Shown one piece after another: positions 1 to 15,485 of a stretch of 64,000 nt of DNA. Every line of letters begins with the position of its first letter. Position 1 is the first letter of the stretch. The stretch covers positions 147,498,001 to 147,562,000 of the forward strand of contig NC_059428.1 in the NCBI RefSeq assembly GCF_021028975.2, written 5' to 3'. The DNA comes from Sphaerodactylus townsendi (taxonomy: Eukaryota). The notes beneath the pieces were generated by a model. The model saw only the letters and a list, made by a program, of their open reading frames with translations, was not told where the DNA came from and did not search any database. The position numbers and the translations under genes are program-made.

Positions 1-3000
1 ACTCTCTCTGCATTGTCAAATGATGGATTTATTTCCCAAATCTGTTTTAGAACCTTCTTGAGAAGCTTTCTTTGTAATCCGATCGTGGTGTAATGGACTC
101 CTGCTTTTGGAAGAAGGATAATCTCCTCTTCCAACCTTCTGGGCGCCATACGGTTCCCAGGGGAGTCCGTTTCGGCTGGCTTCCACTGTTCCAGAGTCCA
201 GAGTCGTAAATAGCAGGATACTTATCAAAGACCGGGCTTTTGGCCTGCTGACCAGTGAGGGTGTTCGAGGCAGTGCTGCTGAGGTCACAGCAGAAATTGG
301 TGCTTGGCCCAAAGAGATTAATTCTCTGTACTTAGCTGTAAGATGGTGGGGCGGGGGGATACCAGGAGCGGAATCGCACATTGCAAAAGAAGTCTTCTGA
401 AACATGGTGTTGGAGCAGCATGCAAAAATAATGAAGGCGCTCCTGTCAGTTCTTGATGCCATTGTTTTTTTCCTGCAAACATCATTTTTGGGGTTGAGAC
501 ACCACACGGCAAAGTTCCAGGGATTTAAGCTCGGCAGCGGCTTCATCTGACGCTTATCTAGACTGGCAGTTTCAGGGAGAGGAAAGGGCCGGATGAAAAC
601 TGTTGAAACAAAAAACCCGTTAGGCCCGTGGACACGTGTGGCCGTTGCTGTTTCAACGAATTGGCTCTTTTGCTTTTTGCAGCTGTGGAAGAATGTACTT
701 CCAAGAAGGGGCGCTGTCTTAGAACTGGACTTTGTTCATAGTTCTGTGCTTTCTTGGCGTGTGTCTCAGAAGTTCAGTATCAGGTATGAAAAAGGTGTCT
801 TAATTTTTTCTACTCGGCGCCTCTCAGAACCTCTCCTTACCTCAGGTGCTGGAGAACGGAGGGAGAGAAGCATATTGGAATGATCTTTGTCATTACCTGG
901 TGGGGCTAAAGAAGGAAAATGACAGGGCAGCCATCAAAGTAGTGGTTTTCGCGGTCTTTCGGCCCTGATAGTTCACTGACTGCACGAGCTTCTCGCTTAT
1001 TGCCTTCTCTGGAGCTTTGAGAGAAACCTGGAAGGAAAAGGCCAGGCAAACAAATTGTCTGTTGATCCATAGTATCTTTTGAAAACATGAATGCCCCTCT
1101 CTTTTTTGAGAGCCTTCTTGACATTGGCATGCAAAGGGTTAGTCCGACCAAACTCCGTTTTGCTCATCTGTTAAGTGCTGCAAACCAGGTGCTTTCTACA
1201 CATCGCAAGGCAAATCGGTGTTTTGGGAACTGTAGTTCTTGAGCGGCTCGAGGGCCGTATTTTCAGTTGCAACCTGCTGCATTTTATACACACCAACACG
1301 ATGAAAAGAACCAGAATATGAGTTCTAGTAAAAACAAAGTTCAACAAAGATGGATGTTCAGTATAAATACACCTGCGTAAAAGCCTTCCTCAGTCCAGTC
1401 TATCTTCCTATCCCCCTACCGCACTTCTTTGGGGGGGGGGGGGATTTAATTCAACTCTGGTTTCCCCTCGTCCTCTGAAGAAATGAAAAAGGAGGATTTG
1501 CTTGTGCTGGTATGCCAAAAAAAAGAGAGAGAAAAATCCCAAGCAGGCTGTTTGCTTCCTGTGGCAGCGGCTGCCCAAGAGTAGCCGGATGAATTGTTTT
1601 AATAAAATGTTGCTTTTTGTAATGACGATATACTTGATTAGAATCCCACTGGACTTCTTTTTTTTTTTTGCGTTTTGGTGGTTCATATGCAGTACTTAAG
1701 TTTTGTCGTGAACACTCTAAGCACAGGCACGCTCCGCAGCTAACTTTTCCTTTGTAATTCCCTCCTCCCCATTTTTTTTTTAAAAACAGCTTTGTTAATT
1801 CTCTTTAAAATAATTTAAAACCTGTATAGTATTCAAAGCACGCCGTGTAAATATTTATTACTCAAAAACTAGTGGAGGGTTCTTTTGTTTTTGGTGACTA
1901 TTTTTTTTTCAGATCTTGTTCTAATACAATGTCCTTTCAACTTGGAAAAGGAAATTAGTGTATCCTGATAAACTGTGTTCCCTTCCAGACCGTTTTGTTT
2001 GAATGTTATATATTTTTTAAAAATTCTGATACCTTTTTAGTTTTGCAAATAGCCTGTCCAAAGAACATGTGAAGTCTTTCAGAACTTTAAAATTACTTAT
2101 CTTTACACTGATTTTCTTCCCTGTACAGTAATCTTATAAGTTGACAGTGGTATAAACTCTTGAGTGTGCAGATTTACTATATTTCTGTAGCGGTAATGGT
2201 GGTAGCAGCTACTCTGACACTAAGCATACACCAATATCCTTGCATGGTAACACTGTTACAAAAGTGAATTAAGGTTCCCATATATTAGGTCCAAGAGCCT
2301 TACTATGCTGTAGCCGTACAGGGACGTTGATGTCTACGAGGATTTCTGCAGACAACTTGTGTAGATGCTGATTCTATCCCGTCCCTTCCAAATTTCATGG
2401 CATGGAATTGTGACAGCATGGCAGAATAGTGTTAGTTTAAGATGACCGTTCAATTTACAGTTACACTTCCATTAACAGCTGAGCTGAGCCTTTACCACTA
2501 GAATATGGGGGGAAAAACCTTAGACATAGAGATACCAGTACTGCATGACTTGAGAAATAGTGAGGTCACCATATACAGTTGGCGTTTTGCTTTTGCTGGT
2601 GGTATTCAAGCAGCCCAGCCCAAAGCCATGCTTAGGAATCTACTAGATGGTGCATGAAACGGGGGGGAAAGGGATTTTGACAATAGATCCAGTTTGCCCA
2701 GTGTAGATGGGCTCAGAGAAGTAATTTGGATTAGGCATGAAAAAAGACATGCGCAGCCACCGTAGCTTAAAATTGCAACGTTCCTCTGTAATTAATTTTT
2801 AAAAGCCAGCCTCAAAATCCACATGCTGGGTTTGAGTGACGAGAGCATATAGTGGTATATTTCTCCGACACGGTACTAGTTTGGACAGGATGGCCTCGAC
2901 GGACTAACCACCACTGTAGTCTGGAAAGAAAGGGAGTAGGGAGGCTATCAACTTGCCTAGGTGACAAGCAGACCCGTGCTCTGTCAGGACAGTTGATGCT

Positions 3001-3450
3001 CTTGAAAAATCAAAGTCGGAGGATCGTGTTTTATTCCCAGTGCTCAGCAAGATTCCGAGGCAAAAATGAGGCCATAGCGGGTGGCGATAATGCAAAACCA
3101 CGAGAGACGCACATTCAAACAAAATCGCTGCAATGAGGAAAGGAGCTTTGGTCTCCACAACCCTGCCTGTATGATTCCGTTCATTTTCATTTGGCAAAGA
3201 ATTGTGAATTTCCTGCTGGGAGTATGAAAAGTATCTTCCTCTTTATTTTCACGCTTTGAAAAGAGCGGTCTCCCTCTTCAGCGGTTCACTGTAATAGAAT
3301 TGTCACTTATGTCGCAGTATTTATTCCTTACAAAATCTTGTGTGACATGCTAGGGGTCCCATGGATGTAGCGCTGATGATTTTTATTTTGTAAATATAAT
3401 TACTTTACTATACATAAAACTATATCGTAATAAACTATTTTTGCACCACT
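1..3450 (+). other. Probable distal 3' UTR of the upstream gene (MPRIP by synteny)
   Basis: TE-free, AT/U-rich tract at 1400-3450 ending in AATAAA (3429, 3490); MPRIP converges on PLD6 in other amniotes. No MPRIP coding exon is visible. Confidence 0.4.
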
Positions 3451-3809
3451 CTTGGCATGCTTTGGAGAAGATTTTTGTTTCAGACAGTTAATAAAAAGGT
3501 CAGGAATTACCAGTCCAGTGGTCTTGGCATCCCTCACTGTGTCCCTGCCCTTGCGAAATGCAATAGTTGGCATTAGGAAACCCCAAGCCATAATGTCAGA
3601 ATGCACGCTTTACTCCATCAAAAGCTTTGGCACGCCAGCACCCACCTCGTCAAAGAGAGTGTGTGTGCATCTGCTTGGCAGAAGCAATTGTTAAATGTCA
3701 TGGTGGCACCTTAAAAGAGAAACAATTTATTCTTCAGAACAGCAGCCCAGTCTAGTGGTTGTTTGCACAGCAATGGGGGATTGAGGGGTACATCTTGTGC
3801 CCGGGTTAA

Positions 3810-4090: not shown

Positions 4091-4377
4091 ACCATCATGC
4101 CGCAAGCTACATGGGCATGGAAAGGTTTGAACCCTCTTCTCCACAATACAGGGATGTCAGGAGCTCCAGGCCACAGCTGGAGGTTGGCGACTCTGTCATC
4201 CAGCTCCATCCCACATCGACTCGCCAGTTGACTTTTCATGGCACAACTTTCTACTTGCTGTCCTTGATTTGACAGTGGCTGGCCTCAAATGTGGACGGTC
4301 CGGATGCTCTTGGAAGATTGTAGCGCACGTATCCCACACGTATCCGAATTCTCTCTCGTTCATGAAGCTTTGCACCC

Positions 4378-6400
4378 TGACCTAGATGGTCCAGCCTACC
4401 CCACTCTCATCTGAAGTGAAGAAGGATCAGCACTGGTCAGGACTTGAATAGGAGACTGCCAAAGAAGTCCAGGGGTCACGACGCAGAGGAAGCAAGAACA
4501 AACCGTCTCTTGCCCTGGCAACCTTGCAGGGCTGCCATAAGTCAGCTCACAGAACTTCAAGTCTGCCACTTGAGATTAAAAATTATTCCTGTTCAGATGC
4601 TAGGTTGAGTTTTATGCAAAGGTTGAACAGCAACAGATTATTCCTAGGGAAAAAAGGCTCGTGCAGCAAAATGTAGGACTTATATATTTTATTGAAACTC
4701 AAGTTTCACAAAAGTACTGCGATTTTGTGAATTCCAGTCACAGGAAAAACATGATATTGCAGATGAATTTATTACACAGTATATTATGAAAAGAGCGTGT
4801 GTGTTTGAAATATGTACAATTTTTACTGAACACAGAAACTGAATAAATCTGCTCTGAAGCTTATTGTGCCTTTGAGGCGGCAATGAAAATCTAGCAGTGT
4901 CTTAAACCACAGACACATGCAACCATGATTGCTTGTCCAAAAACATTAAAACCAGGTTTCCCTGCTTGGGGAAGGAGACAGCTATTTTACTTGGCTGCAT
5001 GGGTTACAGACTGAACATAACTTACGAACATCATCAACAAAATCAATAGAAACCCATGAAAATCACCTAGTAAAATTCTGTAGAGATCTTTCCTGTATAG
5101 GAAAACAAACCTAGCTCTACTTGGAAAAAAAAATCTTTAAACCACAGTGAAAAAAAACTCTTAACTTGCAGAGATCACTGTTTAAGAACTTAAAAGATGT
5201 CAAGCTCTTAAAATCCATCTACGTTTCCCCCTACTGTTTTAAATTTTAACACAAATATTGCTGGGAGAAAAGTCCCTAGCAAAAAAAAAAAGTGATGGGC
5301 AAACTATGATGCAATTATTAAGCAAAGAACATGGGACGAAAAAGGTTTTCTCGGGTTTTGAAGGACACTCTCCCCCGCCCCGCTCCACCAAATGCACAAG
5401 ACTTCTTTCCAGACACACCAAACCTTTCTCTTACATTTGAAGCAAGCCATCTTTTGATACGATGATGGCCTTTAGATGAGGGGGAAATGGCACCGTTGGC
5501 AAGTTATCAATGCCTTCCACAAAAGTCCAGGGGTTTGCAGATTCCCTTCAAATGCAAAATTTAAGTTTGCCTTTTCAGAACAAGGCCTGCTTATCTAGAG
5601 AAACAGCCCAATGAATTGGCGCAAACGCCCCCAAACTAAAAACAGCTTCTTTTATTTTAGCACCATTGTAGGAAACTGACTGCCATGAACAAAACATTGC
5701 CCTAAATTATATTAACCCATCCCTAGACAAACCTACAGGTTATATAACACTGAAAGATTATGATCACACTCCAATGCAGGCAAATATCATCTACCCATCT
5801 GAAAACAAAGCACTTCTGACCTGTGAAGAAAAGGTGCCAAGATGTGTTAAGGCCCCATCACCACCAAAAAGAAAGGGCTCTGCAGGGTAGTGGAAATTCA
5901 CTTTTCCTAGCTTTGCAGAACTAGTCAGACAAACATGGTCCAAGAAGCAATCATCTTTTCTGGCCCATTACAGGCGTTCCTGAATTACTGGAAGCCAACC
6001 CGGAGAGCGTTCAGGGGGCCACACTTATAGTAGTAAGTTGCAGCCCTCCATGGATACTCAAGACTCCTGTTCTTTCCTGCCAGTCCTTGGAGCTAAAGCA
6101 ATAGTGTTCTGACGGGGAAGGCCATAGCAAGAAATTTCCCCAAGCACCACCAAGAAATCCTGGGCTAGTTTCAAGACTCAGAGGATGACAAAGTCAGACT
6201 GCGAACGGTGGACATGAGGTGAGACTTGTACGTCTTGCTGAGGCCCGTCATCCAGAACTTCAGGAGTTTCACATTGTCCTCCTCGGTGGCGCCCCAAATG
6301 CTCAGCAGCTTCTGGGTATCCTCCTTGGGCCGGCTGTCTACTCTGGAGAATTTGAAGAGAACCTTCCCTTTACCATTTAATGCAGTTTAAAAAGAAGCAG
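4378..6400 (-). repeat. Segmental duplicate of the FLCN 3' flank, 3' UTR and last exon (source ~10912-13370)
   Basis: Colinear direct homology, roughly 80% by eye in the UTR part, e.g. 6121-6164 vs 13097-13140. Confidence 0.92.
6165..6372 (-). pseudogene. FLCN: Pseudo-exon copy of the FLCN terminal coding exon
   Basis: 208 nt, 14 mismatches vs 13141-13348; translates [66 protein letters not shown]; acceptor AG>GG; CGA>TGA two codons before the normal stop. Confidence 0.9.
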
Positions 6401-6522
6401 AATATAATATTCCCAAATGCAATTTAAAAAATTACAACAAAAACAAAACAGCTGAGCGACAAACCCACAATTAACAAACTTTTTTCAACTCCCATTCTTA
6501 TTTATTTACTAGTGATAAAATA

Positions 6523-6809
6523 TTATTTTTTCAACTGCCTTTTCCTCTCGGGCTCACATTTGTTCTCTTTTCGTACCTCTTTGGAGAAGAAGTTGTAATT
6601 GGCTGGATCATAGTCTTCCCAAAGCTTTTCAAATTCCGCTTGATAACATTTCACCCACTCGGCGTCTTCGACTATCAAAACGTTCTCCCTGTTCTGCTGG
6701 ATGGCTTGCGAAGTCCAATTGAGGGATCCTGTGAGCAGCCACCTCTTGTCTATGATGGCAAATTTATGGTGCATGTAGCCGCTTTCCTGATCATGACGTA
6801 CCGGAATCC
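6523..6809 (-). CDS. PLD6: PLD6 (MitoPLD/Zucchini) coding exon 2
   Basis: [33 protein letters not shown] contains the HKD motif; AG acceptor at 6810-6811; TAA at 6523-6525. Confidence 0.95.
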
Positions 6810-7596
6810 CTGCACACACAGAACAGACCTGTTACAATTTTTCTAAGATCTGGCTTCTAGGTGTGTATCTACTGCTAACAAACGAGCATTTAAAAAACAG
6901 CATGGGGAAGTCTGGACTAAGGAAGAGCAAAAACATTTCTAAATAAGAATGAAAATGAATGAAAGGGCATGGATTTTGTTTTACAGGCTGGGAATAAAGC
7001 AATGGCGTGAACATGAAACCCTCAAAAAGGAAAACCAGGCTGAAGCTGATTCGCTAGGAAGGCAGAGCAACGGCCACAGATCTACCTTACAGGGCTGTAA
7101 TAACAGTCCCTGAGATGAGTGGAGAGTGGTAGGGTGAGCAAGCATGGCAGTTAGGGGTAGGGATGCCAGCCTCCAGGAGGGGCCTGGAGATCTCCTGGAG
7201 TTGCAAGAGATCTCTGGATGAAAAAGATCAATTCTCCTGGAGAAAAAGGCACCTGGGGGGAAAGGCTCCTGTGGCGTTGATGTCCTTCACCTCCCGATTC
7301 CACCCTCCTTGTGTGCCACACCCCAACATTTTCCCCAACCCGAGATGGCCATCCCAGTTAAGGAAGGATGTCAGATGAGGAACATGGACATACAGCTGGG
7401 AATCCACCCAGTCTGTCAGACCATCTTTATCTTTATATATAGTGTGTATATATATATGTACATATATGTGTGAGTGTATATGTATAGGTTAATAACCCTT
7501 TCTGCTCACTATGGTGAGTGTATATGTATAGCACATACACAGCATATAAATACACGCACACACTACGTATAGTGTGTATCTGTAGTGTGTGTGTAT

Positions 7597-7622: not shown

Positions 7623-7630
7623 GCTATATA

Positions 7631-7862
7631 CCGTGTTTCCCCGAATATAAGACAGTGTCTTATATTAATTTTTGCTCCCAAAGATGCGCTATGTCTTATT
7701 TTCAGGGGATGTCTTATTTTTCTGTGTTCTGTTCGTCGGGCATGCTTCCCAACAAAAACTTTGCTATGTCTTACTTTTGGGGGATGCCTTATATTTCGCA
7801 CTTCAGCAAAACCTCTACTATGTCTTATTTTTAGGGGATGTCTTATATTCGGGGAAACAGGG
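7631..7862. mobile_element. Tc1/mariner-type MITE
   Basis: TIR CCGTGTTTCCCCGAATATAAGACA / TGTCTTATATTCGGGGAAACAGGG; TA on both flanks. Confidence 0.8.
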
Positions 7863-8440
7863 TAGAGATTGTGATATAGTGTGTGTGTGTATCAGCAGGG
7901 TCTCATAGCATATAAATACACTAAAAATCAGCAGGGCCTCATAAGTATATAAATACACGGACACAACATGTATAAAGTGTGTATCTGTAGAGCGTGTGTA
8001 TACACACACGAGCTATATAGAGACATGCTATATAGCGTGTGTATATATGTCCAGTTGAATTGCACTAGTCCAGCAGTATCCAACATACATACATACATTG
8101 TATAGTGTGTATATTTCAATCTGCTGGATCAAAAAAAAGTAAACACAAGGAAGCTATAAACCTGATACAGAAACATAGGCCAGTCACACACACACAAACA
8201 TACATAACTCAACCTGACCTACCAGACAGGGTTGTCATAAGGCTGAAAAAAGACCTACCAGACAGGATCAGAAGGGGTGTGCTCCCCCAATAAAAATCAG
8301 CAGGGTCTCATAGTCTTCCAACTTCATAGTTCCCCTATTCCTATCACCCTTTTCAGTTTCATTTCCTTTTACTATTTACGTTTCTACCCAGTCCTCCTTG
8401 CTATATCTTCCACACCCCTCCCAGTGCCTGTACCTTCACA

Positions 8441-8672
8441 CCGTGTTTCCTCGAAAATAAGACAGTGTCTTATATTGATTTTTGCTCCCAAAGATGCGCT
8501 ATGTCTTATTTTCAGGGGATGTCTTATTTTTCTGTGTTCTGTTTGTCGGGCATGCTTCCCAACAAAAACTATGCTACGTCTTACTTTCGGGGGATGCCTT
8601 ATATTTCGCACTTCAGCAAAACTTCTGCTACGTCTTATTTTCAGTGGATGTCTTATATTCAGGGAAACAGGG
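8441..8672. mobile_element. Second copy of the same Tc1/mariner-type MITE
   Basis: Near-identical to 7631-7862. Confidence 0.8.
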
Positions 8673-9676
8673 TATAAGCATCTTTTATACGTGCTTCCAT
8701 ATTTTTTACCAGCAAATTCTTTTAAGGATATATATTTCAAATGTACCTCGCTTTAAAAAAATCTTATCTACTTGATGACTAACGTGGGTGTTTTGTTAAA
8801 AGGATTATTTTTTAAAAGATAGACTAGGTCCAGGTTTGAAGGAACCTCTGGATACAAGCCAAAAAATTGCATGTGTCCAATGGAATCGCATGTGCCCAAG
8901 GAATTGCATGTGTCCAGTAGGATAAGAGCTGGCATGGCCCAGCTCTAGTGGATAGAGTAGGGGTGGCCAACCTATGGTATTCCAGATGTTCATGGACTAC
9001 AATTCCCATCAGCCATGCTGGCAGTTGATGGGAATTGTAGTCCATGAACATATGGAGCACCATAGGTTGGCCATCCCTAGGCGAGAGTGTTGGACTGGAA
9101 CCCTGGTAGACCTGACTTCAAATCCCCCCTTCTATCATGGCATCTGAAGGCTCGTTACAAACTCTTAGTCTGGCCTAACCTTACAGGTTGTTGTTATAGG
9201 GGCAACGAGCAAGGGACCAATGATGTTCTAAGCCACTTTTGAGTCCCGGCTGGGGAAACAAGTGGGATTTCAACCAATAAGCGCAAATGAATATGTAGAT
9301 GAGGAGAGGAGTGGGTGGTTTGAGACGGATGAATGGGAGGGGGCAGGGGTTAAAAGAAGGCGGCTTGGGGGGCATTATCCTTATTCATAGGTGTCAAACT
9401 CGCAGCCCTCCAGATGTTATGGACTACAGTTCCCATCATCCCCTGCCAGCATCATGCTGGCCATGCTGGCGGGGCTGATGGGATTTGTAGTCCATGAACA
9501 TCTGGAGAGCCGCAGGTTGCAGACCCCAGAAATATACCAATAAAAATATTTTTTAAAGGTGCAAGGGTCTTTGTTCTTTTAGCATCTGGAGGGGCCGCGT
9601 GTCTGACACCTGCGGATGAGAGAGAGATCCTTCCCAGTCCGGCCATCCCGCCACGTGGAGGGTCTCGCCCCAGTAC

Positions 9677-10082
9677 CGGCCAGGCGGAGGGCGCCGATCT
9701 GGGAGCCCCGGAGGGCCATGTAGTCGGCGTCGGTGATCACCCGGATGCGGACGCCTCGGTGGTGGAGGAGCAGGAGGACGCGGCGGAGCTGGTGGCTGGA
9801 GAAGGCGAAGAGGCAGAGGTCGAGCGAACGGCGGGCGCTGAGCAGGCGGGCCACCAGGCGGCCGAGCGAGGTCCGGTCGTCGTGGGGCAGCGAGCACAAG
9901 CACGGGGCCCCGCCCTCGGCGGCCGCTATCTGCCCCTCGACGCACGACAGGCGCGACGGGAAGAACAGCGCCTCCCGCAGCCGCCGCGCCTCCCGCCGCC
10001 TCAGCAGCCACTCGACCAGCAGCTCGCAGCCGACGGCCGCCGCCACCGACGCCAGGCCCCACCACAGCCCACGTGGCGCCAT
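9677..10082 (-). CDS. PLD6: PLD6 coding exon 1
   Basis: [22 protein letters not shown] (membrane anchor), REALFFPS..C..CxCxLPH (CCCH zinc motif), [23 protein letters not shown]; GT donor at 9675-9676; 406+287=693 nt. Confidence 0.93.
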
Positions 10083-10115
10083 CGCTCCCGCCGCCGCCGC
10101 CCCTCCGGCTGCCCC

Positions 10116-10521
10116 TGCGCATGCGCCGCGCTCAACCGCCGCCAACGGGTTCTCCCGCGCTTCCCCCCCTCGCCTCCTTATTGGTGGGGATGGCAGAGGG
10201 CCTAAGGACTCCGCCTCAACACCTTCCCGCTGCGCATGCGCCTCGCTCAACTGCTGTCAACGGATCCGCCCCCCCCCTCCTTATTGGTGAGGATGGCAGA
10301 GCGCCTCTCCTTAAGGACGCCGCCTCAACACCTCCCGGCTGCGCATGCGCCTCTCCCAACCGCCGTCAACGGATTCTCCCGCGTTCCCCCGCCCCTTCCT
10401 TATTGGTGGGGATGGCAGAGCGCCTAACACCTCCCCGCTGCGCACGCGCCGCATTCAACCGCCGCCAACGGGTTCTCCCGCGCTTTCCTCCCCCTCGCCT
10501 CCTCGTTGGTGGGGATGGCAG
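10116..10521 (-). promoter_or_regulatory. PLD6 promoter: four tandem ~100-115 bp units with NRF1, MYB and CCAAT motifs
   Basis: TGCGCATGCGC at 10116, 10231, 10340 (TGCGCACGCGC at 10439), each followed by CAACYG..CAACGG, then ATTGG in units 1-3 (GTTGG in unit 4). Confidence 0.75.
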
Positions 10522-13140
10522 GATCAACTCTGGTTAGGACTGGAATAGGAGACTGCCAAGGAAGTACAGGGGTCACTATGCAGAGGAAGTAAGAACAAAG
10601 CTCCTATGTGGCCAACCTATGGCACTCCTATGTGGCCATCCTGGCAGGGGTTGATGGGAATTGTAGTCCATGGACATTTGGAACGCCATAGGTTGGCCAC
10701 CCCCGTAGGCTAATCTCTCTTGCCCTGACAACCTTGCAGGGCCGCCATAAGTCAGCCGACAGCACTCAAAGTCTGCCACTTGTGATGAAAAAGCTACATT
10801 CCTGTTAACAGGTGCTGGGTTGGTTATATGCAAAGGTTGAACAGCAGCAGATCGTTCCCAGGAAGAAAGACTCGTTCAGTGAAATGTAGGACTTTTGGAT
10901 TTTATTTAAACTGACCTAGATGGACCCAGGCTAGCGAAATCTCATCTGATCTCAGAAGGCAAGAAGGATCAGCCCCGGGTTAGGACTTGGATGGGAAACC
11001 ACCAAGGAAGTCCAGGGTCGCTATGCAGAGGAAGCAATAAGAAATCTCCTGAAAACTTTAGTGGGCTGCCATAAATCAGCTGCAACCTGACAGCACTTGA
11101 AGTCTGCCACTTGGAATACCTGCCAGGTTGGTTTTTGCTAAGTTTGAACTGCAATAGATATTCCCAGGAAGAAAGACTTGTGAAGTGAAATGGACAACTT
11201 TTATATTTTAGTTAAATTTACAATTTCACAGAAGTACTGCAATGAAAGATGCAGGAAAAAATGTGACCTTAGAGATGAATTTATTAACTCAGTGTATATT
11301 ATGAAAAAAGTAGTAGAACATGAAGAGTTTTGGATTTATATCCTGTTTTTCTCTCCTGTCAGGAGACTCAAGATGGCTTACAAAATCCTTTCCCTTCCTC
11401 TCCCCACAACAGACACCTTGTGAGGCAGGTGGGGCTGAGAGAGAGAGAACCATGACTGGCCCAAGGTCATCCAGTAGGCTTCACGTGCAGGAACAGGGAA
11501 AACAAATCTGGTTTGTGTGGAGGAGCGGGGAATCAACCCTGGTTCTCTAGATTACAGTCCACTGCTCTTAACCACTACACCACACTGGCTCACTAGAGTA
11601 TGTGTGTTTGAAAAAATTTATAATTTTTATTGTTGTCACCCCCTTCCCACCAAAAAGCTGCTCTGAAGCTTATTGTGGATTTGAGGCAGCATTGAGAATT
11701 CAGTGGTTTCTTAAACTACATGCACATATGAACCAGATGTGCCTGGCCAAAAATATGAAAACCAGGTTTTTCCTGCTTGGGGGAAAAAACAGCTATTTTA
11801 TTTGGTTCATGGGCTACAGACTGAACATAGCTTTTAAATTAAAACGGCAAAATTATCAACAAAAATCAGTATAAATATCTGAAAATTATAGCCACATTTT
11901 GCAAGACAACAAGCCTAGTTTTACTTAGAAAAAATATTTAAGCCACTCTGTGATAAAAAAAAAATTGTTATCAACTTACAAAGAAGTTAGATATGTGCAG
12001 TGTTTAAAATCTATCTTTGTTTTTCCTTTTCATTTTAAATTTCAACATAAATATTGATGGGGGAGAAGTCCCTAGCAAAGGACTTGTTGGATAAACTACA
12101 AACCACTGTGCAAATATTAATTTTTTAAAAAAACAACCCCAAAACATGAGAAAAAGGTTCTTTCTCCCGTTACAAGGGATGCTCTCCGCTCACCAAACGC
12201 ACAGGACTTTTTCACAAACATTTCTCTTATATGTGGAGCAAGCCACCTTCTGATCAGACCATGGCCTTTACACAAATACCAAACATGATGCAGTATACTC
12301 TTACTGCGACTTTTTCTTCCAATTGAAACTGAAAAAAGAGATCTTCTCCAAACAGTGTTTATTTTCTCCACAGTGCCAAGAATCATCAGCACATTGGTGG
12401 GAGGGGGAATAAGACAGTTTGCAAGTTTTCACTGCCTTCTACGAGAATGGAAAGTCCAGGGTCTTGCAGGCAGATTCCTTTCAAATACAAAATTTAAGTT
12501 TCCCTTTTCAAGGCAAAGCCTGCTTATCTACCGGGTTATAAAGAAACAGCCCAATCACAGTTCCAATCAGTTGGCTCAAGCACCCTCCCACCGATCTAAA
12601 AAAAACAAGACTCTTTTCTTTTGGCTGCATTGTGGGAAGTCAACTGGCAGAATCAACACAGTCTGAACCCATCCCAAGAAAAATCCGCTACGATCATACT
12701 CCAGTGCAGGCAAAGGAGACCATCTACTCATCTGAAAACAGACGAAGCACTTTTGACTTGCGGAGGATAGCATCAGGGACGGTTAAAAACACAACATGTT
12801 TTAAGTTTCCAACTCCCCAATAAAAAGTTCTGCCAGGGTGGGAGAAATTCATCATTCCCAGCTTTGCGAAACTGGTTAGAAAAACATGATCCAAGACACA
12901 ATAATCTTTTCTAGCCCATAGACATGGGAGAACATCCCCACCGCAGGCACTTCTGAATTACTGGAAAACAGCCCGGAAAGCATTCAGGTGTCCATGCATA
13001 CAGTAGTAAGTTGGAGCTCTCCATGGATACAGACGAATCCTATTCTTCCTTGCCTCAGTCCTTGGAGCTGAGGCAACGGGGTTCCGATGGGGAAGGCCAC
13101 AGCAAGAAATTTTCCCCAAGCACCACCAAAAAATCCTGGG

Positions 13141-13380
<240 letters not shown>

Positions 13381-14213
13381 TCAAAATAAAGCCAAAAAAA
13401 TAAAACCCTTCCAAACACTGCAAGATGAAAGCTGCATAAATTGTCTTAATGGAAATACAGAGTTTCATTATGTTGGTCACAGAAGTACTCTGTGAACAAC
13501 CCTTTTGTTTTTTATGAAGAACTTTTAAAAAATTGAACCCGGCATAAGCTTAAAAAAACTACGTCTCACACTCACGCAGCTAAACACCAAAAGGGAATTG
13601 CACCTCGAAGTTTACCACATCAAAAATGATGCACTTCATGGCCAAACGGGTTAAGGAACAGCACAATCCTAAACAGAACTGCAACTTCCAAAGTCTCTGG
13701 GCTTAGAACACACTTAGCTCACATTGTGGACAGTCGGACAGAGTTGAAGAGGACCAAAGACGCATTTGACACAATTCACTATAATGTCCAAAGGAGCTGT
13801 CTCAAAACAGCAACTCATCTGTTATATTATCTATATATCAATTTGCATCTATTGGTTGAAATCCCACTTTCCTCCCTAGTCGGGACTCACAGTGGCTTTG
13901 AACATCGCTGTTCTGAAGTCAGGTTTCCCAAGATTCCAGTCCAACACTCTGTCCACTAGAGCTGGGCCAGGCCAGCTCTTACCCTACTGGACACATGCGA
14001 TTCCTTGGGAACATGCGATTCTGCTAGACTAGTGCGATTCCATTAGACACATGCAGTTTTTGGGCTGGTATCCAGAGGTCCTTTCAAACCTGAACATAGT
14101 CATGTCTTTTAAAAATAATTCCTTTAACACAACAGCCACGTTCCTGGGCGGAGGAGAGATGTATCTCAAGGCACTTAAAAAACCTTTTACAGAAGTTGGA
14201 GGCAGCCACTTAC

Positions 14214-14685: not shown

Positions 14686-14833
14686 CAGGGGTAGGGAACC
14701 TGCGGCTCTCCAGATGTTCAGGAACTACAATTCCCATCAGCCTCTGTCAGCATGGCCAATTGGCCATGCTGGTAGGGGCTGATGGGAATTGTAGTTCCTG
14801 AACATCTGGAGAGCCGCAGGTTCCCTACCCCTG
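14686..14833. mobile_element. Palindromic hAT-type MITE nested in a SINE
   Basis: CAGGGGTAGGGAACCTGCGG...CCGCAGGTTCCCTACCCCTG, near-perfect hairpin centred on GGCCAATTGGCC. Relatives at ~8958-9079, 9388-9527, 10606-10705, 24434-24545, 48684-48750, 57681-57826, 62955-63041. Confidence 0.8.
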
Positions 14834-15485
14834 CTCTAGCTCAAGGTGGCCTACGAGCTCCTTTCCCTTCCTCTCTCCACAACAGACACCTTGTGAGGTA
14901 GGTGGGGCTGAGAGAGTTCTGAAGAACTGTGACTGGCCCAAGGTCACCCAAAGGGAATACAGGAGTGCGGAAACACATCTGGTTCACCAGATAAGCCTCC
15001 GCCACTCAGGTGAAGGAGCGGGAATTAAACCGGGTTCTCCAGATTAGAATCCACTTGCTCTTAACCACTACACCACACTGATGGACCCATAAGAATACAT
15101 AGTCACCTTACACTGAATCAGATTTTTGGTCAATGAATGTCAGAATTATCTAGTCAGGTGGGCAGCTGCTCTCCAAGGTCTCCAATGCTGGGGATTGAAC
15201 CTGGCACCTTCTGCACGCCAACCAGGAAATATACGTATACTTTTCCTTAGCGCAAAGCACACCCATCATTTACACAGTATGGCGTACCATCTGATGAACA
15301 GCAAACTAGGTTACTTTCATGTAACCTCTGACCCTAAATGCGCCTCCTCTTTCTATGCACCTATCCAAACTTGGGAGAAGTCGTGATATCTTTGTACCCC
15401 TAAATCTACAGCCGCTACTGAGGAAAGCGTGGTATTTGTCTACCGAACACCACGCGTTTTGGAGATGGCTGAACATGCTGTTTAC

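What the first reader, a model, noticed from the sequence alone, without database searches (positions are those of the whole stretch)
4378..6522. PLD6 is followed directly by a duplicated FLCN last exon plus 3' UTR
Seen: ~2 kb colinear copy of 10912-13370; the copied exon begins 150 nt after the PLD6 stop, on the same strand, so PLD6 lies between two direct FLCN 3' ends. The copy has lost its splice acceptor (AG>GG). Inference: a tandem duplication broke just behind the PLD6 CDS, and PLD6 mRNA may now use an FLCN-derived 3' UTR and polyA site, sharing miRNA/RBP sites with FLCN. The direct repeats also allow recombination that would delete or duplicate PLD6 while leaving FLCN nearly intact. Caveat: an AATAAA at 6501-6506 (minus) could end PLD6 before the copy.
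Basis: partly seen in the sequence, partly recalled or inferred. Interest (0 to 1): 0.8.

Follow-up and report, generated by a model that had tools for sequence, protein, structure and literature searches.

The report
FLCN end copy captured by PLD6
In the gecko Sphaerodactylus townsendi an old 2-kb copy of the end of the folliculin gene sits about 100 bases behind the piRNA nuclease gene PLD6, and both public gene annotations splice PLD6 into it, which would give the enzyme a new tail, though no RNA reads could be checked here.

Summary
Window 4377-6437 (copy A) is a collinear, same-strand copy of 10911-13414 (copy B). Copy B holds the last 40-65 nt of the final FLCN intron, the last exon, the 3' UTR and about 0.6 kb beyond the poly(A) signal. 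Copy A starts 86-111 nt after the PLD6 stop.

The genome is Sphaerodactylus townsendi. The copies differ by 12-24%, and one SINE is present in B only, so this is not an assembly artefact. Heteronotia and Varanus lack the copy.

The main new result concerns the gene models. RefSeq PLD6 (XP_048350108.1) splices from a donor inside exon 2 (6577|6576) to a new acceptor inside the FLCN-derived exon (6343|6342). This removes the ancestral tail, stop and AATAAA, and the exon is read out of the FLCN frame as a 54-aa tail. The submitter's model uses a second GT-AG pair (6558|6557 to 6368|6367) in the FLCN frame.

The copy evolves neutrally in both frames. The conserved FLCN poly(A) hexamer is mutated in it, and only 1 of 14 conserved FLCN UTR blocks survives. 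The longest identical run between copies is 90 bp.

This is an ordinary kind of event (exon capture after partial duplication) in a notable gene.

The parts
9677..10082 (-). PLD6 exon 1 CDS (ATG 10082-10080; donor GT 9676-9675, phase 1)
   Evidence: 100% match to RefSeq XP_048350108.1 (P0115).
6523..6809 (-). PLD6 exon 2 in its ancestral form: HKD motif, tail [17 protein letters not shown], stop TAA 6525-6523
   Evidence: The tail is homologous to other gecko PLD6 tails. The solved mouse MitoPLD structure 4GGJ aligns to residues 33-215, so the fold ends near FFSKE.
6343..6576 (-). 234-nt intron of the RefSeq model (GTACGA...CCAG). It removes the ancestral tail, the stop, AATAAA and the dead FLCN acceptor.
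6368..6557 (-). 190-nt intron of the submitter (Funannotate) model A0ACB8FK01 (GTGAGC...AAAG)
6501..6506 (-). AATAAA 17 nt after the PLD6 stop. It is specific to this lineage and lies inside both annotated introns.
4377..6437 (-). Copy A: the whole duplicated segment (40-65 nt of FLCN intron, last exon, 3' UTR, post-poly(A) DNA and a 5S-type SINE)
6373..6374 (-). Position of the lost FLCN acceptor (GG in A; AG in B and three other species)
6165..6372 (-). FLCN-derived last-exon copy. The FLCN frame 6365-6174 is open for 64 codons, with a premature TGA at 6173-6171. It matches Pfam Folliculin_C profile positions 176-227.
6178..6342 (-). RefSeq PLD6 exon 3 CDS: 54 codons read out of the FLCN frame, stop TGA 6180-6178. 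The acceptor CAG was made by A-specific AAA>AGA and ACC>TCC changes. The stop was made by an A-specific change.
   Evidence: The tail has no Pfam match.
4986..6164 (-). Copy of the FLCN 3' UTR. The homologue of the conserved FLCN poly(A) hexamer reads AGTAAA at 4991-4986.
5651..5656 (-). AATAAA gained in copy A (B has AAGAAA). Candidate poly(A) signal for PLD6 transcripts.
4768..4773 (-). AATAAA shared with B 11285-11280. Candidate distal poly(A) signal.
4377..4720 (+). 5S-derived SINE R2a. Its exact 5' end is the low end of the copy.
   Evidence: The homologue R2c scores 24.2 bits against Rfam 5S_rRNA, E 0.019, below the gathering score.
10911..13414 (-). Copy B, the source. FLCN last exon 13348-13141, 3' UTR to the conserved AATAAA at 11802-11797, post-poly(A) DNA, and SINE R2c at 10911-11221.
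11308..11600 (.). Dispersed SINE (R1 family) present in B only, so inserted after the duplication
10520..10912 (+). 5'-truncated SINE R2b abutting R2c, carrying a nested 116-nt palindromic element
7..3548 (+). Conserved block homologous to the DNA downstream of the MPRIP CDS in Heteronotia and Varanus. It is presumably the MPRIP 3' UTR, convergent with PLD6.

Best explanation
In the lineage leading to Sphaerodactylus townsendi, a 2.06-kb piece of DNA was copied in direct orientation into the short spacer between the convergent 3' ends of PLD6 and MPRIP. The insertion point is 86-111 nt behind the PLD6 stop codon. The piece comprises the last 40-65 nt of the final FLCN intron, the last FLCN exon, its 3' UTR, and about 0.6 kb beyond the poly(A) site up to the 5' end of a 5S-type SINE. 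FLCN itself still uses copy B and is intact.

The copy has since decayed at about the neutral rate as FLCN sequence. Its acceptor AG became GG, it took eight amino-acid changes including a nonsense codon, its poly(A) hexamer is mutated, and most conserved UTR blocks are lost.

Point changes in the copy created a new CAG acceptor 30 nt inside the exon. PLD6 exon 2 carries usable GT donors upstream of its stop. PLD6 pre-mRNA that is not cleaved at the adjacent AATAAA can therefore splice out the ancestral 17-aa tail, the stop and the AATAAA, and end in the FLCN-derived exon.

In the RefSeq model this gives a 267-aa Zucchini/MitoPLD. The catalytic fold is complete, and a 54-aa tail comes from reading the folliculin exon in another frame, followed by an FLCN-derived 3' UTR.

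Shown here: the duplication, its boundaries, its absence in two outgroups, the neutral decay, the splice-site changes, and the exact GT-AG mapping of both public models. Inferred: that RNA-seq supports the junctions, and which isoform dominates.
For: Duplication:
- Collinear repeat.
- It is not a haplotype or assembly duplicate. BLAST-block identity is 76-89%, and raw A-B difference is 24% over a global UTR alignment. A SINE is present only in B.
- Sequencing runs from three studies hold 35-99% of the 31-mers of 4378-6830. Only 16% of that stretch lies outside copy A, and only 3% of its words recur elsewhere in the window.

Lineage-specific origin:
- Heteronotia binoei (L001) and Varanus komodoensis (L002) have one FLCN last exon upstream of PLD6 and none downstream.
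- Their PLD6-MPRIP spacers are 1.0-1.3 kb, against 3.0 kb here.

DNA-level origin:
- The copy includes intron sequence and runs about 600 nt past the poly(A) hexamer conserved with Heteronotia.

Capture by PLD6:
- P0115 = XP_048350108.1 maps as 10082-9677, 6809-6577 and 6342-6178 with GT-AG introns.
- P0129 = A0ACB8FK01 maps as ...6558 | 6367-6171 with GT-AG, and carries both PLDc_2 and Folliculin_C.
- The submitter's pipeline used head and embryo transcriptomes.
- The new acceptor was made by A-specific substitutions.
- The mouse MitoPLD structure ends at the splice point, so the fold is kept.

Neutral decay:
- In the 211-nt exon there are 11 A-specific changes against 1 B-specific change.
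- pN/pS is 0.77 in the FLCN frame and 1.26 in the RefSeq frame.
Against:
- The two annotations disagree on donor, acceptor and frame, so at least one is not the main isoform and either could be a predictor's choice.
- An AATAAA lies 17 nt after the canonical stop and could end most transcripts before the copy.
- The canonical tail ORF is still intact and resembles other gecko tails.
- Neither frame of the captured exon shows purifying selection, so the new tail may be neutral or rarely made.
- Known S. townsendi RNA-seq is from head and embryo, not gonad.
Confidence: 0.7

Rival explanations
1. The duplication is real but functionally inert. PLD6 mRNAs end at the AATAAA at 6506-6501, the FLCN-derived piece is an untranscribed or barely transcribed pseudo-exon, and the annotated junctions are prediction artefacts or splicing noise.
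For: - AATAAA lies 17 nt after the stop.
- The canonical tail is still open and gecko-like.
- The copy evolves neutrally in all frames.
- The two pipelines give different junctions.
- No Logan-derived protein from this species carries either junction.
Against: - Two independent pipelines both join PLD6 exon 2 to this exon with canonical GT-AG.
- The RefSeq tail is in a frame with no homology or domain. My inference from how Gnomon works is that protein evidence or coding potential would not pick that frame, so it points to spliced RNA-seq alignments.
- Heteronotia has no AATAAA or ATTAAA for 1.07 kb after its PLD6 stop. The ancestral 3' UTR was therefore probably long and would run through the insertion site.
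Confidence: 0.25
2. Copy A is a retro-inserted copy of a plus-strand transcript antisense to the FLCN 3' end. The transcript would start at the 5S-type SINE R2c, or at the divergent side of the PLD6 CpG-island promoter, and end at plus-strand AATAAA signals in the last FLCN intron. On this reading it is not a DNA duplication.
For: - The low end of the copy is the exact 5' end of the SINE. The SINE head resembles 5S rRNA.
- The other end lies in an A-rich plus-strand stretch next to plus-strand AATAAA motifs.
Against: - No target-site duplication of 7 nt or more was found.
- The A-rich stretch has a T-rich counterpart in B, the intron's polypyrimidine tract, so it need not be a tail.
- A retrocopy landing 4.4 kb from its source in direct orientation would be a large coincidence (inference).
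- A Pol III transcript would have to read through many T-runs over 2 kb (inference).
Confidence: 0.08
3. Assembly artefact: a single FLCN 3' end was duplicated by mis-assembly.
For: None found, apart from the general risk in a multi-technology scaffolded assembly.
Against: - Divergence of 12-24%, many indels, and a SINE in one copy only.
- A-specific 31-mers are held by runs of three studies and three coded organisms.
Confidence: 0.02

Closest known systems
Chimeric genes born from partial gene duplication or exon capture (for example Drosophila jingwei-type chimeras and duplicated terminal exons recruited by a neighbouring gene; named from my own knowledge)
   Same: A DNA-level partial duplicate of one gene supplies a new terminal exon and 3' UTR to a neighbouring gene. 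The junction is made by cryptic or new splice sites.
   Different: - The captured exon is read, in the RefSeq model, in a frame other than its parent's. The new tail therefore owes nothing to folliculin's protein sequence.
- The donor lies inside the recipient's own last coding exon, and the new intron removes the old stop and poly(A) signal.
- RNA support was not verified here.
Unprocessed (duplicated) pseudogene fragment
   Same: The copy lost its acceptor, gained a nonsense codon, lost its poly(A) hexamer and evolves neutrally.
   Different: It lies in the transcription path of PLD6, and two annotations include it in PLD6 mRNA.
Overprinting: a new coding sequence obtained by translating existing coding DNA in another frame
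   Same: The 54-aa RefSeq tail is the +1 frame of a folliculin exon. That frame is also open in the parent exon.
   Different: It arises in a duplicated, decaying copy rather than in the functioning gene. No selection on the new frame is detectable.
PLD6 / Zucchini / MitoPLD (HKD-family nuclease of piRNA biogenesis; PDB 4GGJ, 4GEL)
   Same: Exons 1-2 encode a complete PLDc_2 domain with the HKD motif, E 6.8e-74 against mouse MitoPLD.
   Different: The C-terminal 17 residues are replaced in both annotated models. Other gecko PLD6 proteins keep the ...ERQLKK-type tail.

Membership tests
DNA-level segmental (partial-gene) duplication | Collinear paralogous DNA that includes sequence absent from the mature mRNA (intron, post-poly(A) DNA) | tested here: met
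   The copy holds 40-65 nt of intron. It also holds about 600 nt beyond the poly(A) hexamer conserved with Heteronotia.
DNA-level segmental (partial-gene) duplication | Absent at the orthologous place in outgroups | tested here: met
   Heteronotia L001 and Varanus L002 have a single FLCN last exon and none between PLD6 and MPRIP. Closer relatives such as Euleptes and Teratoscincus could not be fetched.
Processed retrocopy of FLCN mRNA | Starts within exons, lacks intron sequence, ends at the gene's poly(A) site with an A-tail and target-site duplications | tested here: not met
   Intron sequence is present, the copy extends past the poly(A) site, and there is no TSD of 7 nt or more.
Chimeric gene by exon capture | Canonical splice junction joining the host exon to the duplicated exon, with an open frame across it | tested here: met
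   Two GT-AG junctions, each with an open frame, map exactly to P0115 and P0129.
Chimeric gene by exon capture | Junction seen in RNA | not testable with these tools
No run is on record as RNA. No Logan-derived protein carries the junction.
Chimeric gene by exon capture | Selection on the captured coding sequence | tested here: not met
   A-lineage pN/pS is 0.77 in the FLCN frame and 1.26 in the RefSeq frame, with 8 nonsynonymous changes against 2-3 synonymous. Power is low: 211 nt.
PLD6/Zucchini (PLDc_2, HKD nuclease) | PLDc_2 domain with the HxK(x)4D motif and homology to the solved MitoPLD | tested here: met
   Pfam PF13091, E 3.6e-30, and PF00614. 4GGJ, E 6.8e-74, over residues 33-215.
Folliculin C-terminal (DENN-like) domain | Complete Folliculin_C domain (Pfam PF16692, 227 positions) | tested here: not met
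   Only profile positions 173/176-227 are present in P0129 and in copy A. That is one exon's worth, which cannot form the domain.
Low-copy repeats that mediate non-allelic homologous recombination | High identity (roughly 95% or more) with long perfectly identical stretches of a few hundred bp. This criterion is from my own knowledge of mammalian NAHR. | tested here: not met
   The longest identical run is 90 bp, and block identity is 76-89%.

The most novel reading that the evidence does not exclude
The FLCN-derived exon is the regular terminal coding exon of PLD6 in Sphaerodactylus germ cells. On this reading two point mutations created an acceptor that replaced the conserved C-terminal tail of the essential piRNA nuclease Zucchini. 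The replacement is a 54-residue peptide born by reading a folliculin exon out of frame, and PLD6 also received a 3' UTR of FLCN origin. That would be a datable, stepwise case of a new C-terminus in a core piRNA-pathway enzyme.
Probability: 0.3. Interest if true: 0.65.

Novelty: new member of a known kind. Interest (0 to 1): 0.5.

Why it matters
PLD6/Zucchini makes the 5' ends of piRNAs on the mitochondrial surface and is strongly conserved. If the annotated models are right, a gecko lineage has swapped its C-terminal tail and 3' UTR for sequence derived from the neighbouring tumour-suppressor gene FLCN.

Every step can be read in the DNA:
- insertion of the copy;
- loss of the old acceptor;
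- creation of a new acceptor by two substitutions;
- use of a donor already present in the old last exon;
- creation of a new stop.

That makes it a clean teaching case of exon capture and overprinting. It could be tested in a genus for which head, embryo and population sequencing data already exist.

If the models are wrong, it warns that the RefSeq and GenBank PLD6 proteins of this species carry artefactual C-termini. Such artefacts would pollute alignments of Zucchini and produce spurious 'PLDc_2 + Folliculin_C' architectures in UniProt.

Tried and rejected
No read evidence was obtained. Those places were sent to no search tool afterwards.
- The exact look-up of the 83-aa exon-2 ORF in the assembly collection found nothing.
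- The Logan contig L003 (SRR22184594) first looked like an FLCN-PLD6 read-through transcript. It lacks PLD6 exon 2, so it is unspliced DNA of another species and I dropped it as evidence.
- Retrocopy or SINE-transduction origin: no TSD was found, and the A-rich end has a counterpart in B. I kept it only as a low-probability rival.
- I considered purifying selection on the conserved exon core (6197-6338). Its two changes are both nonsynonymous in both frames and none is synonymous. A 90-bp identical run has P of about 0.004 under uniform change, so gene conversion with the true FLCN exon fits better than protein-level selection.
- I first inferred that the small run X4 must be RNA. I withdrew this because the 'million letters' column may give contig size, not run size.
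- Rfam found nothing meaningful in SINE R2a.
- The global alignment over-fits its gaps, so I used BLAST blocks and MAFFT instead.
The exons were searched by reference, and the two full models used were proteins returned by the tools.
Full report
OBSERVATION. A self-comparison of 3-15 kb shows a chain of collinear direct matches between 4377-6412 and 10911-13382. BLAST blocks are 76-89% identical. The block with the exon (5971-6373 vs 12944-13349) is 87.9% identical, and 6132-6393 vs 13108-13369 is 91% ungapped. Weak homology runs on to about 6437/13414. Only 73 of 2423 31-mers of 4378-6830 recur elsewhere in the window, all in the exon core, so the match is specific and not a dispersed repeat.

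All genes here are on the minus strand:
- PLD6 exon 1 is 10082-9677.
- PLD6 exon 2 is 6809-6523, with stop TAA at 6525-6523.
- The true FLCN last exon is 13348-13141.
- The copied exon starts at 6372, 151 nt after the PLD6 stop.
- The ancestral acceptor GCAG|TAAAG, identical in copy B, Heteronotia, Varanus and an unnamed species, reads ATGG|TAAAG in copy A.
- AATAAA at 6506-6501 is present.

WHOSE GENOME. The exon-1 peptide matches XP_048350108.1 of Sphaerodactylus townsendi at 100%. That protein is encoded on CM037617.2 of GCA_021028975.2 at 147.49-147.52 Mb. The neighbours there are FLCN (582 aa, ending at window 13141) upstream and a convergent PH-domain gene of 2190 aa downstream. The latter is MPRIP by position and by comparison with human 17p11.2, which I know from memory. 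Window 7-3548 is 74-83% identical to the DNA after the MPRIP CDS in Heteronotia and Varanus, so it is most likely the MPRIP 3' UTR.

REAL, OLD AND LINEAGE-SPECIFIC.
- The copies differ by 12-24%, with many indels.
- A dispersed SINE (R1 family, many copies in the window) interrupts B at 11308-11600 but not A.
- Runs from three studies and three coded organisms hold 35-99% of the 31-mers of 4378-6830. Only 16% of that stretch lies outside copy A and only 3% of its words are shared with other parts of the window. The related organisms must therefore carry copy A as well.
- An assembly artefact is excluded for practical purposes.
- Heteronotia binoei (L001) and Varanus komodoensis (L002) have one FLCN last exon, upstream of PLD6, and none in the 1.0-1.3 kb between PLD6 and MPRIP. 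In S. townsendi that spacer is 3.0 kb. Copy A accounts for 2.06 kb of it and an R1 SINE for 0.27 kb.

On age: copy A has 11 changes in the 211-nt exon that can be assigned to its own lineage by comparison with the outgroups, plus 2 ambiguous ones, against 1 for B. In 1030 three-way UTR columns there are 119 A-specific, 92 B-specific and 182 Heteronotia-or-stem differences (uncorrected and inflated by alignment noise). The event therefore lies somewhere between about a third and two thirds of the depth of the Sphaerodactylus-Heteronotia split. From my recollection of gecko divergence times, that means tens of millions of years.

HOW THE COPY AROSE. Copy A begins inside the last FLCN intron. It runs about 600 nt beyond the only poly(A) hexamer conserved between S. 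townsendi FLCN (11802-11797) and Heteronotia (L001:8195). It is therefore not a processed retrocopy.

There is no second PLD6, so a simple tandem duplication would need a later, exact deletion. A local insertional duplication, for example by template switching, is the simpler reading.

The low end coincides exactly with the 5' end of a 5S-derived SINE (4377 in A, 10911 in B). The head of R2c scores 24.2 bits, E 0.019, against Rfam 5S_rRNA. This prompted a retro-insertion hypothesis: a plus-strand transcript starting at the SINE. I found no target-site duplication, and the A-rich end has a counterpart in B. I keep that idea at under 10%.

One point remains unexplained. SINE R2a is closer in sequence to the truncated neighbour R2b (83-89%) than to its positional homologue R2c (73-78%).

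WHAT THE COPY DOES NOW. The decisive result came from the protein searches. RefSeq PLD6 (P0115, 267 aa) follows my exon 1 and exon 2 up to ...NYNFFSKE and then continues with 54 residues that are not PLD6.
- Mapping gives exon 2 ending at 6577 with donor GTACGA, and exon 3 at 6342-6178 with acceptor TTCTCTTCAAATTCTCCAG|AG.
- Exon 3 lies inside the FLCN-derived exon but in a different frame from FLCN.
- The 234-nt intron removes the ancestral tail [17 protein letters not shown], the stop, the AATAAA and the dead FLCN acceptor.
- The new CAG acceptor was made by two A-specific substitutions, AAA>AGA and ACC>TCC. The new stop TGA at 6180-6178 was also made by an A-specific change.
- The donor GT is ancestral: it is the GTA codon of the tail, also present in Heteronotia. 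The G at position +5 is specific to S. townsendi.

A second, independent model comes from the submitter's Funannotate annotation, which was fed with head and embryo transcriptomes. It is UniProt A0ACB8FK01 (P0129, 137 aa).
- It joins ...VRKENK to the same exon through another GT-AG pair, AAAT|GTGAGC at 6558|6557 and TAAAG|GG at 6368|6367.
- It reads the exon in the FLCN frame.
- It therefore carries both PLDc_2 and the last 55 positions of Folliculin_C.

Both acceptors lie downstream of the old FLCN branch-point and pyrimidine region (TCTAAC in B, TTTAAAC in A). It is plausible that this region still serves after the loss of the original AG, but that is inference.

The solved mouse MitoPLD structure (4GGJ) aligns to residues 33-215, so either splice leaves the catalytic fold whole. 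Only the unstructured tail changes.

HOW FAR THIS CAN BE TRUSTED. I could not look at reads. None of the listed runs is recorded as RNA. No Logan-derived protein of this species is in the protein collection.

My argument that RNA supports at least the RefSeq junction is indirect. A frame without homology or domain is not what protein evidence or coding potential would choose, so spliced alignments are the likely source. I put about 0.75-0.8 on at least one junction being real, and much less on either being the main germline isoform.

Against capture:
- the AATAAA 17 nt behind the canonical stop;
- the intact canonical tail;
- the lack of any sign of selection on the captured exon, with pN/pS of 0.77 in the FLCN frame and 1.26 in the RefSeq frame.

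For read-through: Heteronotia has no canonical hexamer for 1.07 kb after its PLD6 stop. The ancestral 3' UTR was therefore probably long and would pass through the insertion site.

- The FLCN poly(A) hexamer homologue in the copy is AGTAAA (4991-4986). Candidate signals instead are an A-specific AATAAA at 5656-5651, and an AATAAA at 4773-4768 that is shared with B.
- Of 14 blocks of 10 nt or more that are identical between the S. townsendi and Heteronotia FLCN UTRs, one is intact in the copy. Sharing of regulatory sites with FLCN is therefore at best residual.
- The longest identical run between the copies is 90 bp, poor for crossover. That run is longer than chance allows (P of about 0.004 within the exon), and the conserved core has no synonymous change. 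A past gene-conversion tract from the true exon is the best explanation of the 'conserved core' noted separately by the scan (s1-755999).

COMPARISON AND NOVELTY. The mechanism belongs to a well-known class: chimeric gene structure after partial duplication, with exon capture and, in the RefSeq model, overprinting. The event is present only implicitly in two database protein records. I rate it a new member of a known kind, of moderate interest because of the gene involved. Its value depends on an RNA check that is easy to do.

Noticed in passing
window 6197-6338: The core of the FLCN-derived exon has only 2 differences from the true exon, including a 90-bp identical run (P about 0.004 under uniform change). 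Both differences are nonsynonymous in both frames and none is synonymous. This suggests gene conversion with the true FLCN exon rather than protein-level constraint.
   Followed up: partly
window 10088-10537: The PLD6 promoter CpG island holds four tandem units of about 100-119 nt, each with GCGCATGCGC and ATTGG (CCAAT) motifs. It abuts the truncated SINE R2b.
   Followed up: no
window 4423-4720, 10520-10912, 10965-11240: SINE R2a resembles the truncated neighbour R2b (83-89%) more than its positional homologue R2c (73-78%). This is not explained by a simple duplication. Conversion among SINE copies or unequal decay is possible.
   Followed up: partly
window 8953-9079, 9457-9530, 10633-10703, 14686-14838: A family of palindromic elements of about 75 nt per arm (for example 14686-14759 / 14760-14833, 96% complementary with no spacer), MITE-like. 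One is nested in SINE R2b.
   Followed up: no
window 7630-7864 and 8440-8674: A 235-nt direct repeat (94%) inside the PLD6 intron, next to CA-rich microsatellites. Places 7439-7487 tripped the reads filter and were left alone.
   Followed up: no
window 7-3548: A long non-coding block 74-83% identical to Heteronotia and Varanus, most likely the MPRIP 3' UTR on the plus strand (AATAAA at 3490), convergent with PLD6.
   Followed up: partly
P0117 (Paroedura picta PLD6 isoform X2): Another gecko has an annotated PLD6 isoform that leaves exon 2 early (...NVLILEDA|DQKRVKS...) for a different C-terminus. Internal donors in the PLD6 last exon may be used more widely in geckos.
   Followed up: no
L003 (Logan SRR22184594 contig, 3753 nt): In an unnamed species the FLCN last exon (1911-2111) lies only about 1 kb upstream of PLD6 exon 1 (3052-). 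The called 228-aa 'PLD6' is exon 1 read on into the intron, not a spliced product.
   Followed up: partly
UniProt A0ACB8FK01 / XP_048350108.1: The two database proteins for S. townsendi PLD6 have different, non-homologous C-termini. One creates a 'PLDc_2 + Folliculin_C' architecture that could mislead domain surveys.
   Followed up: yes
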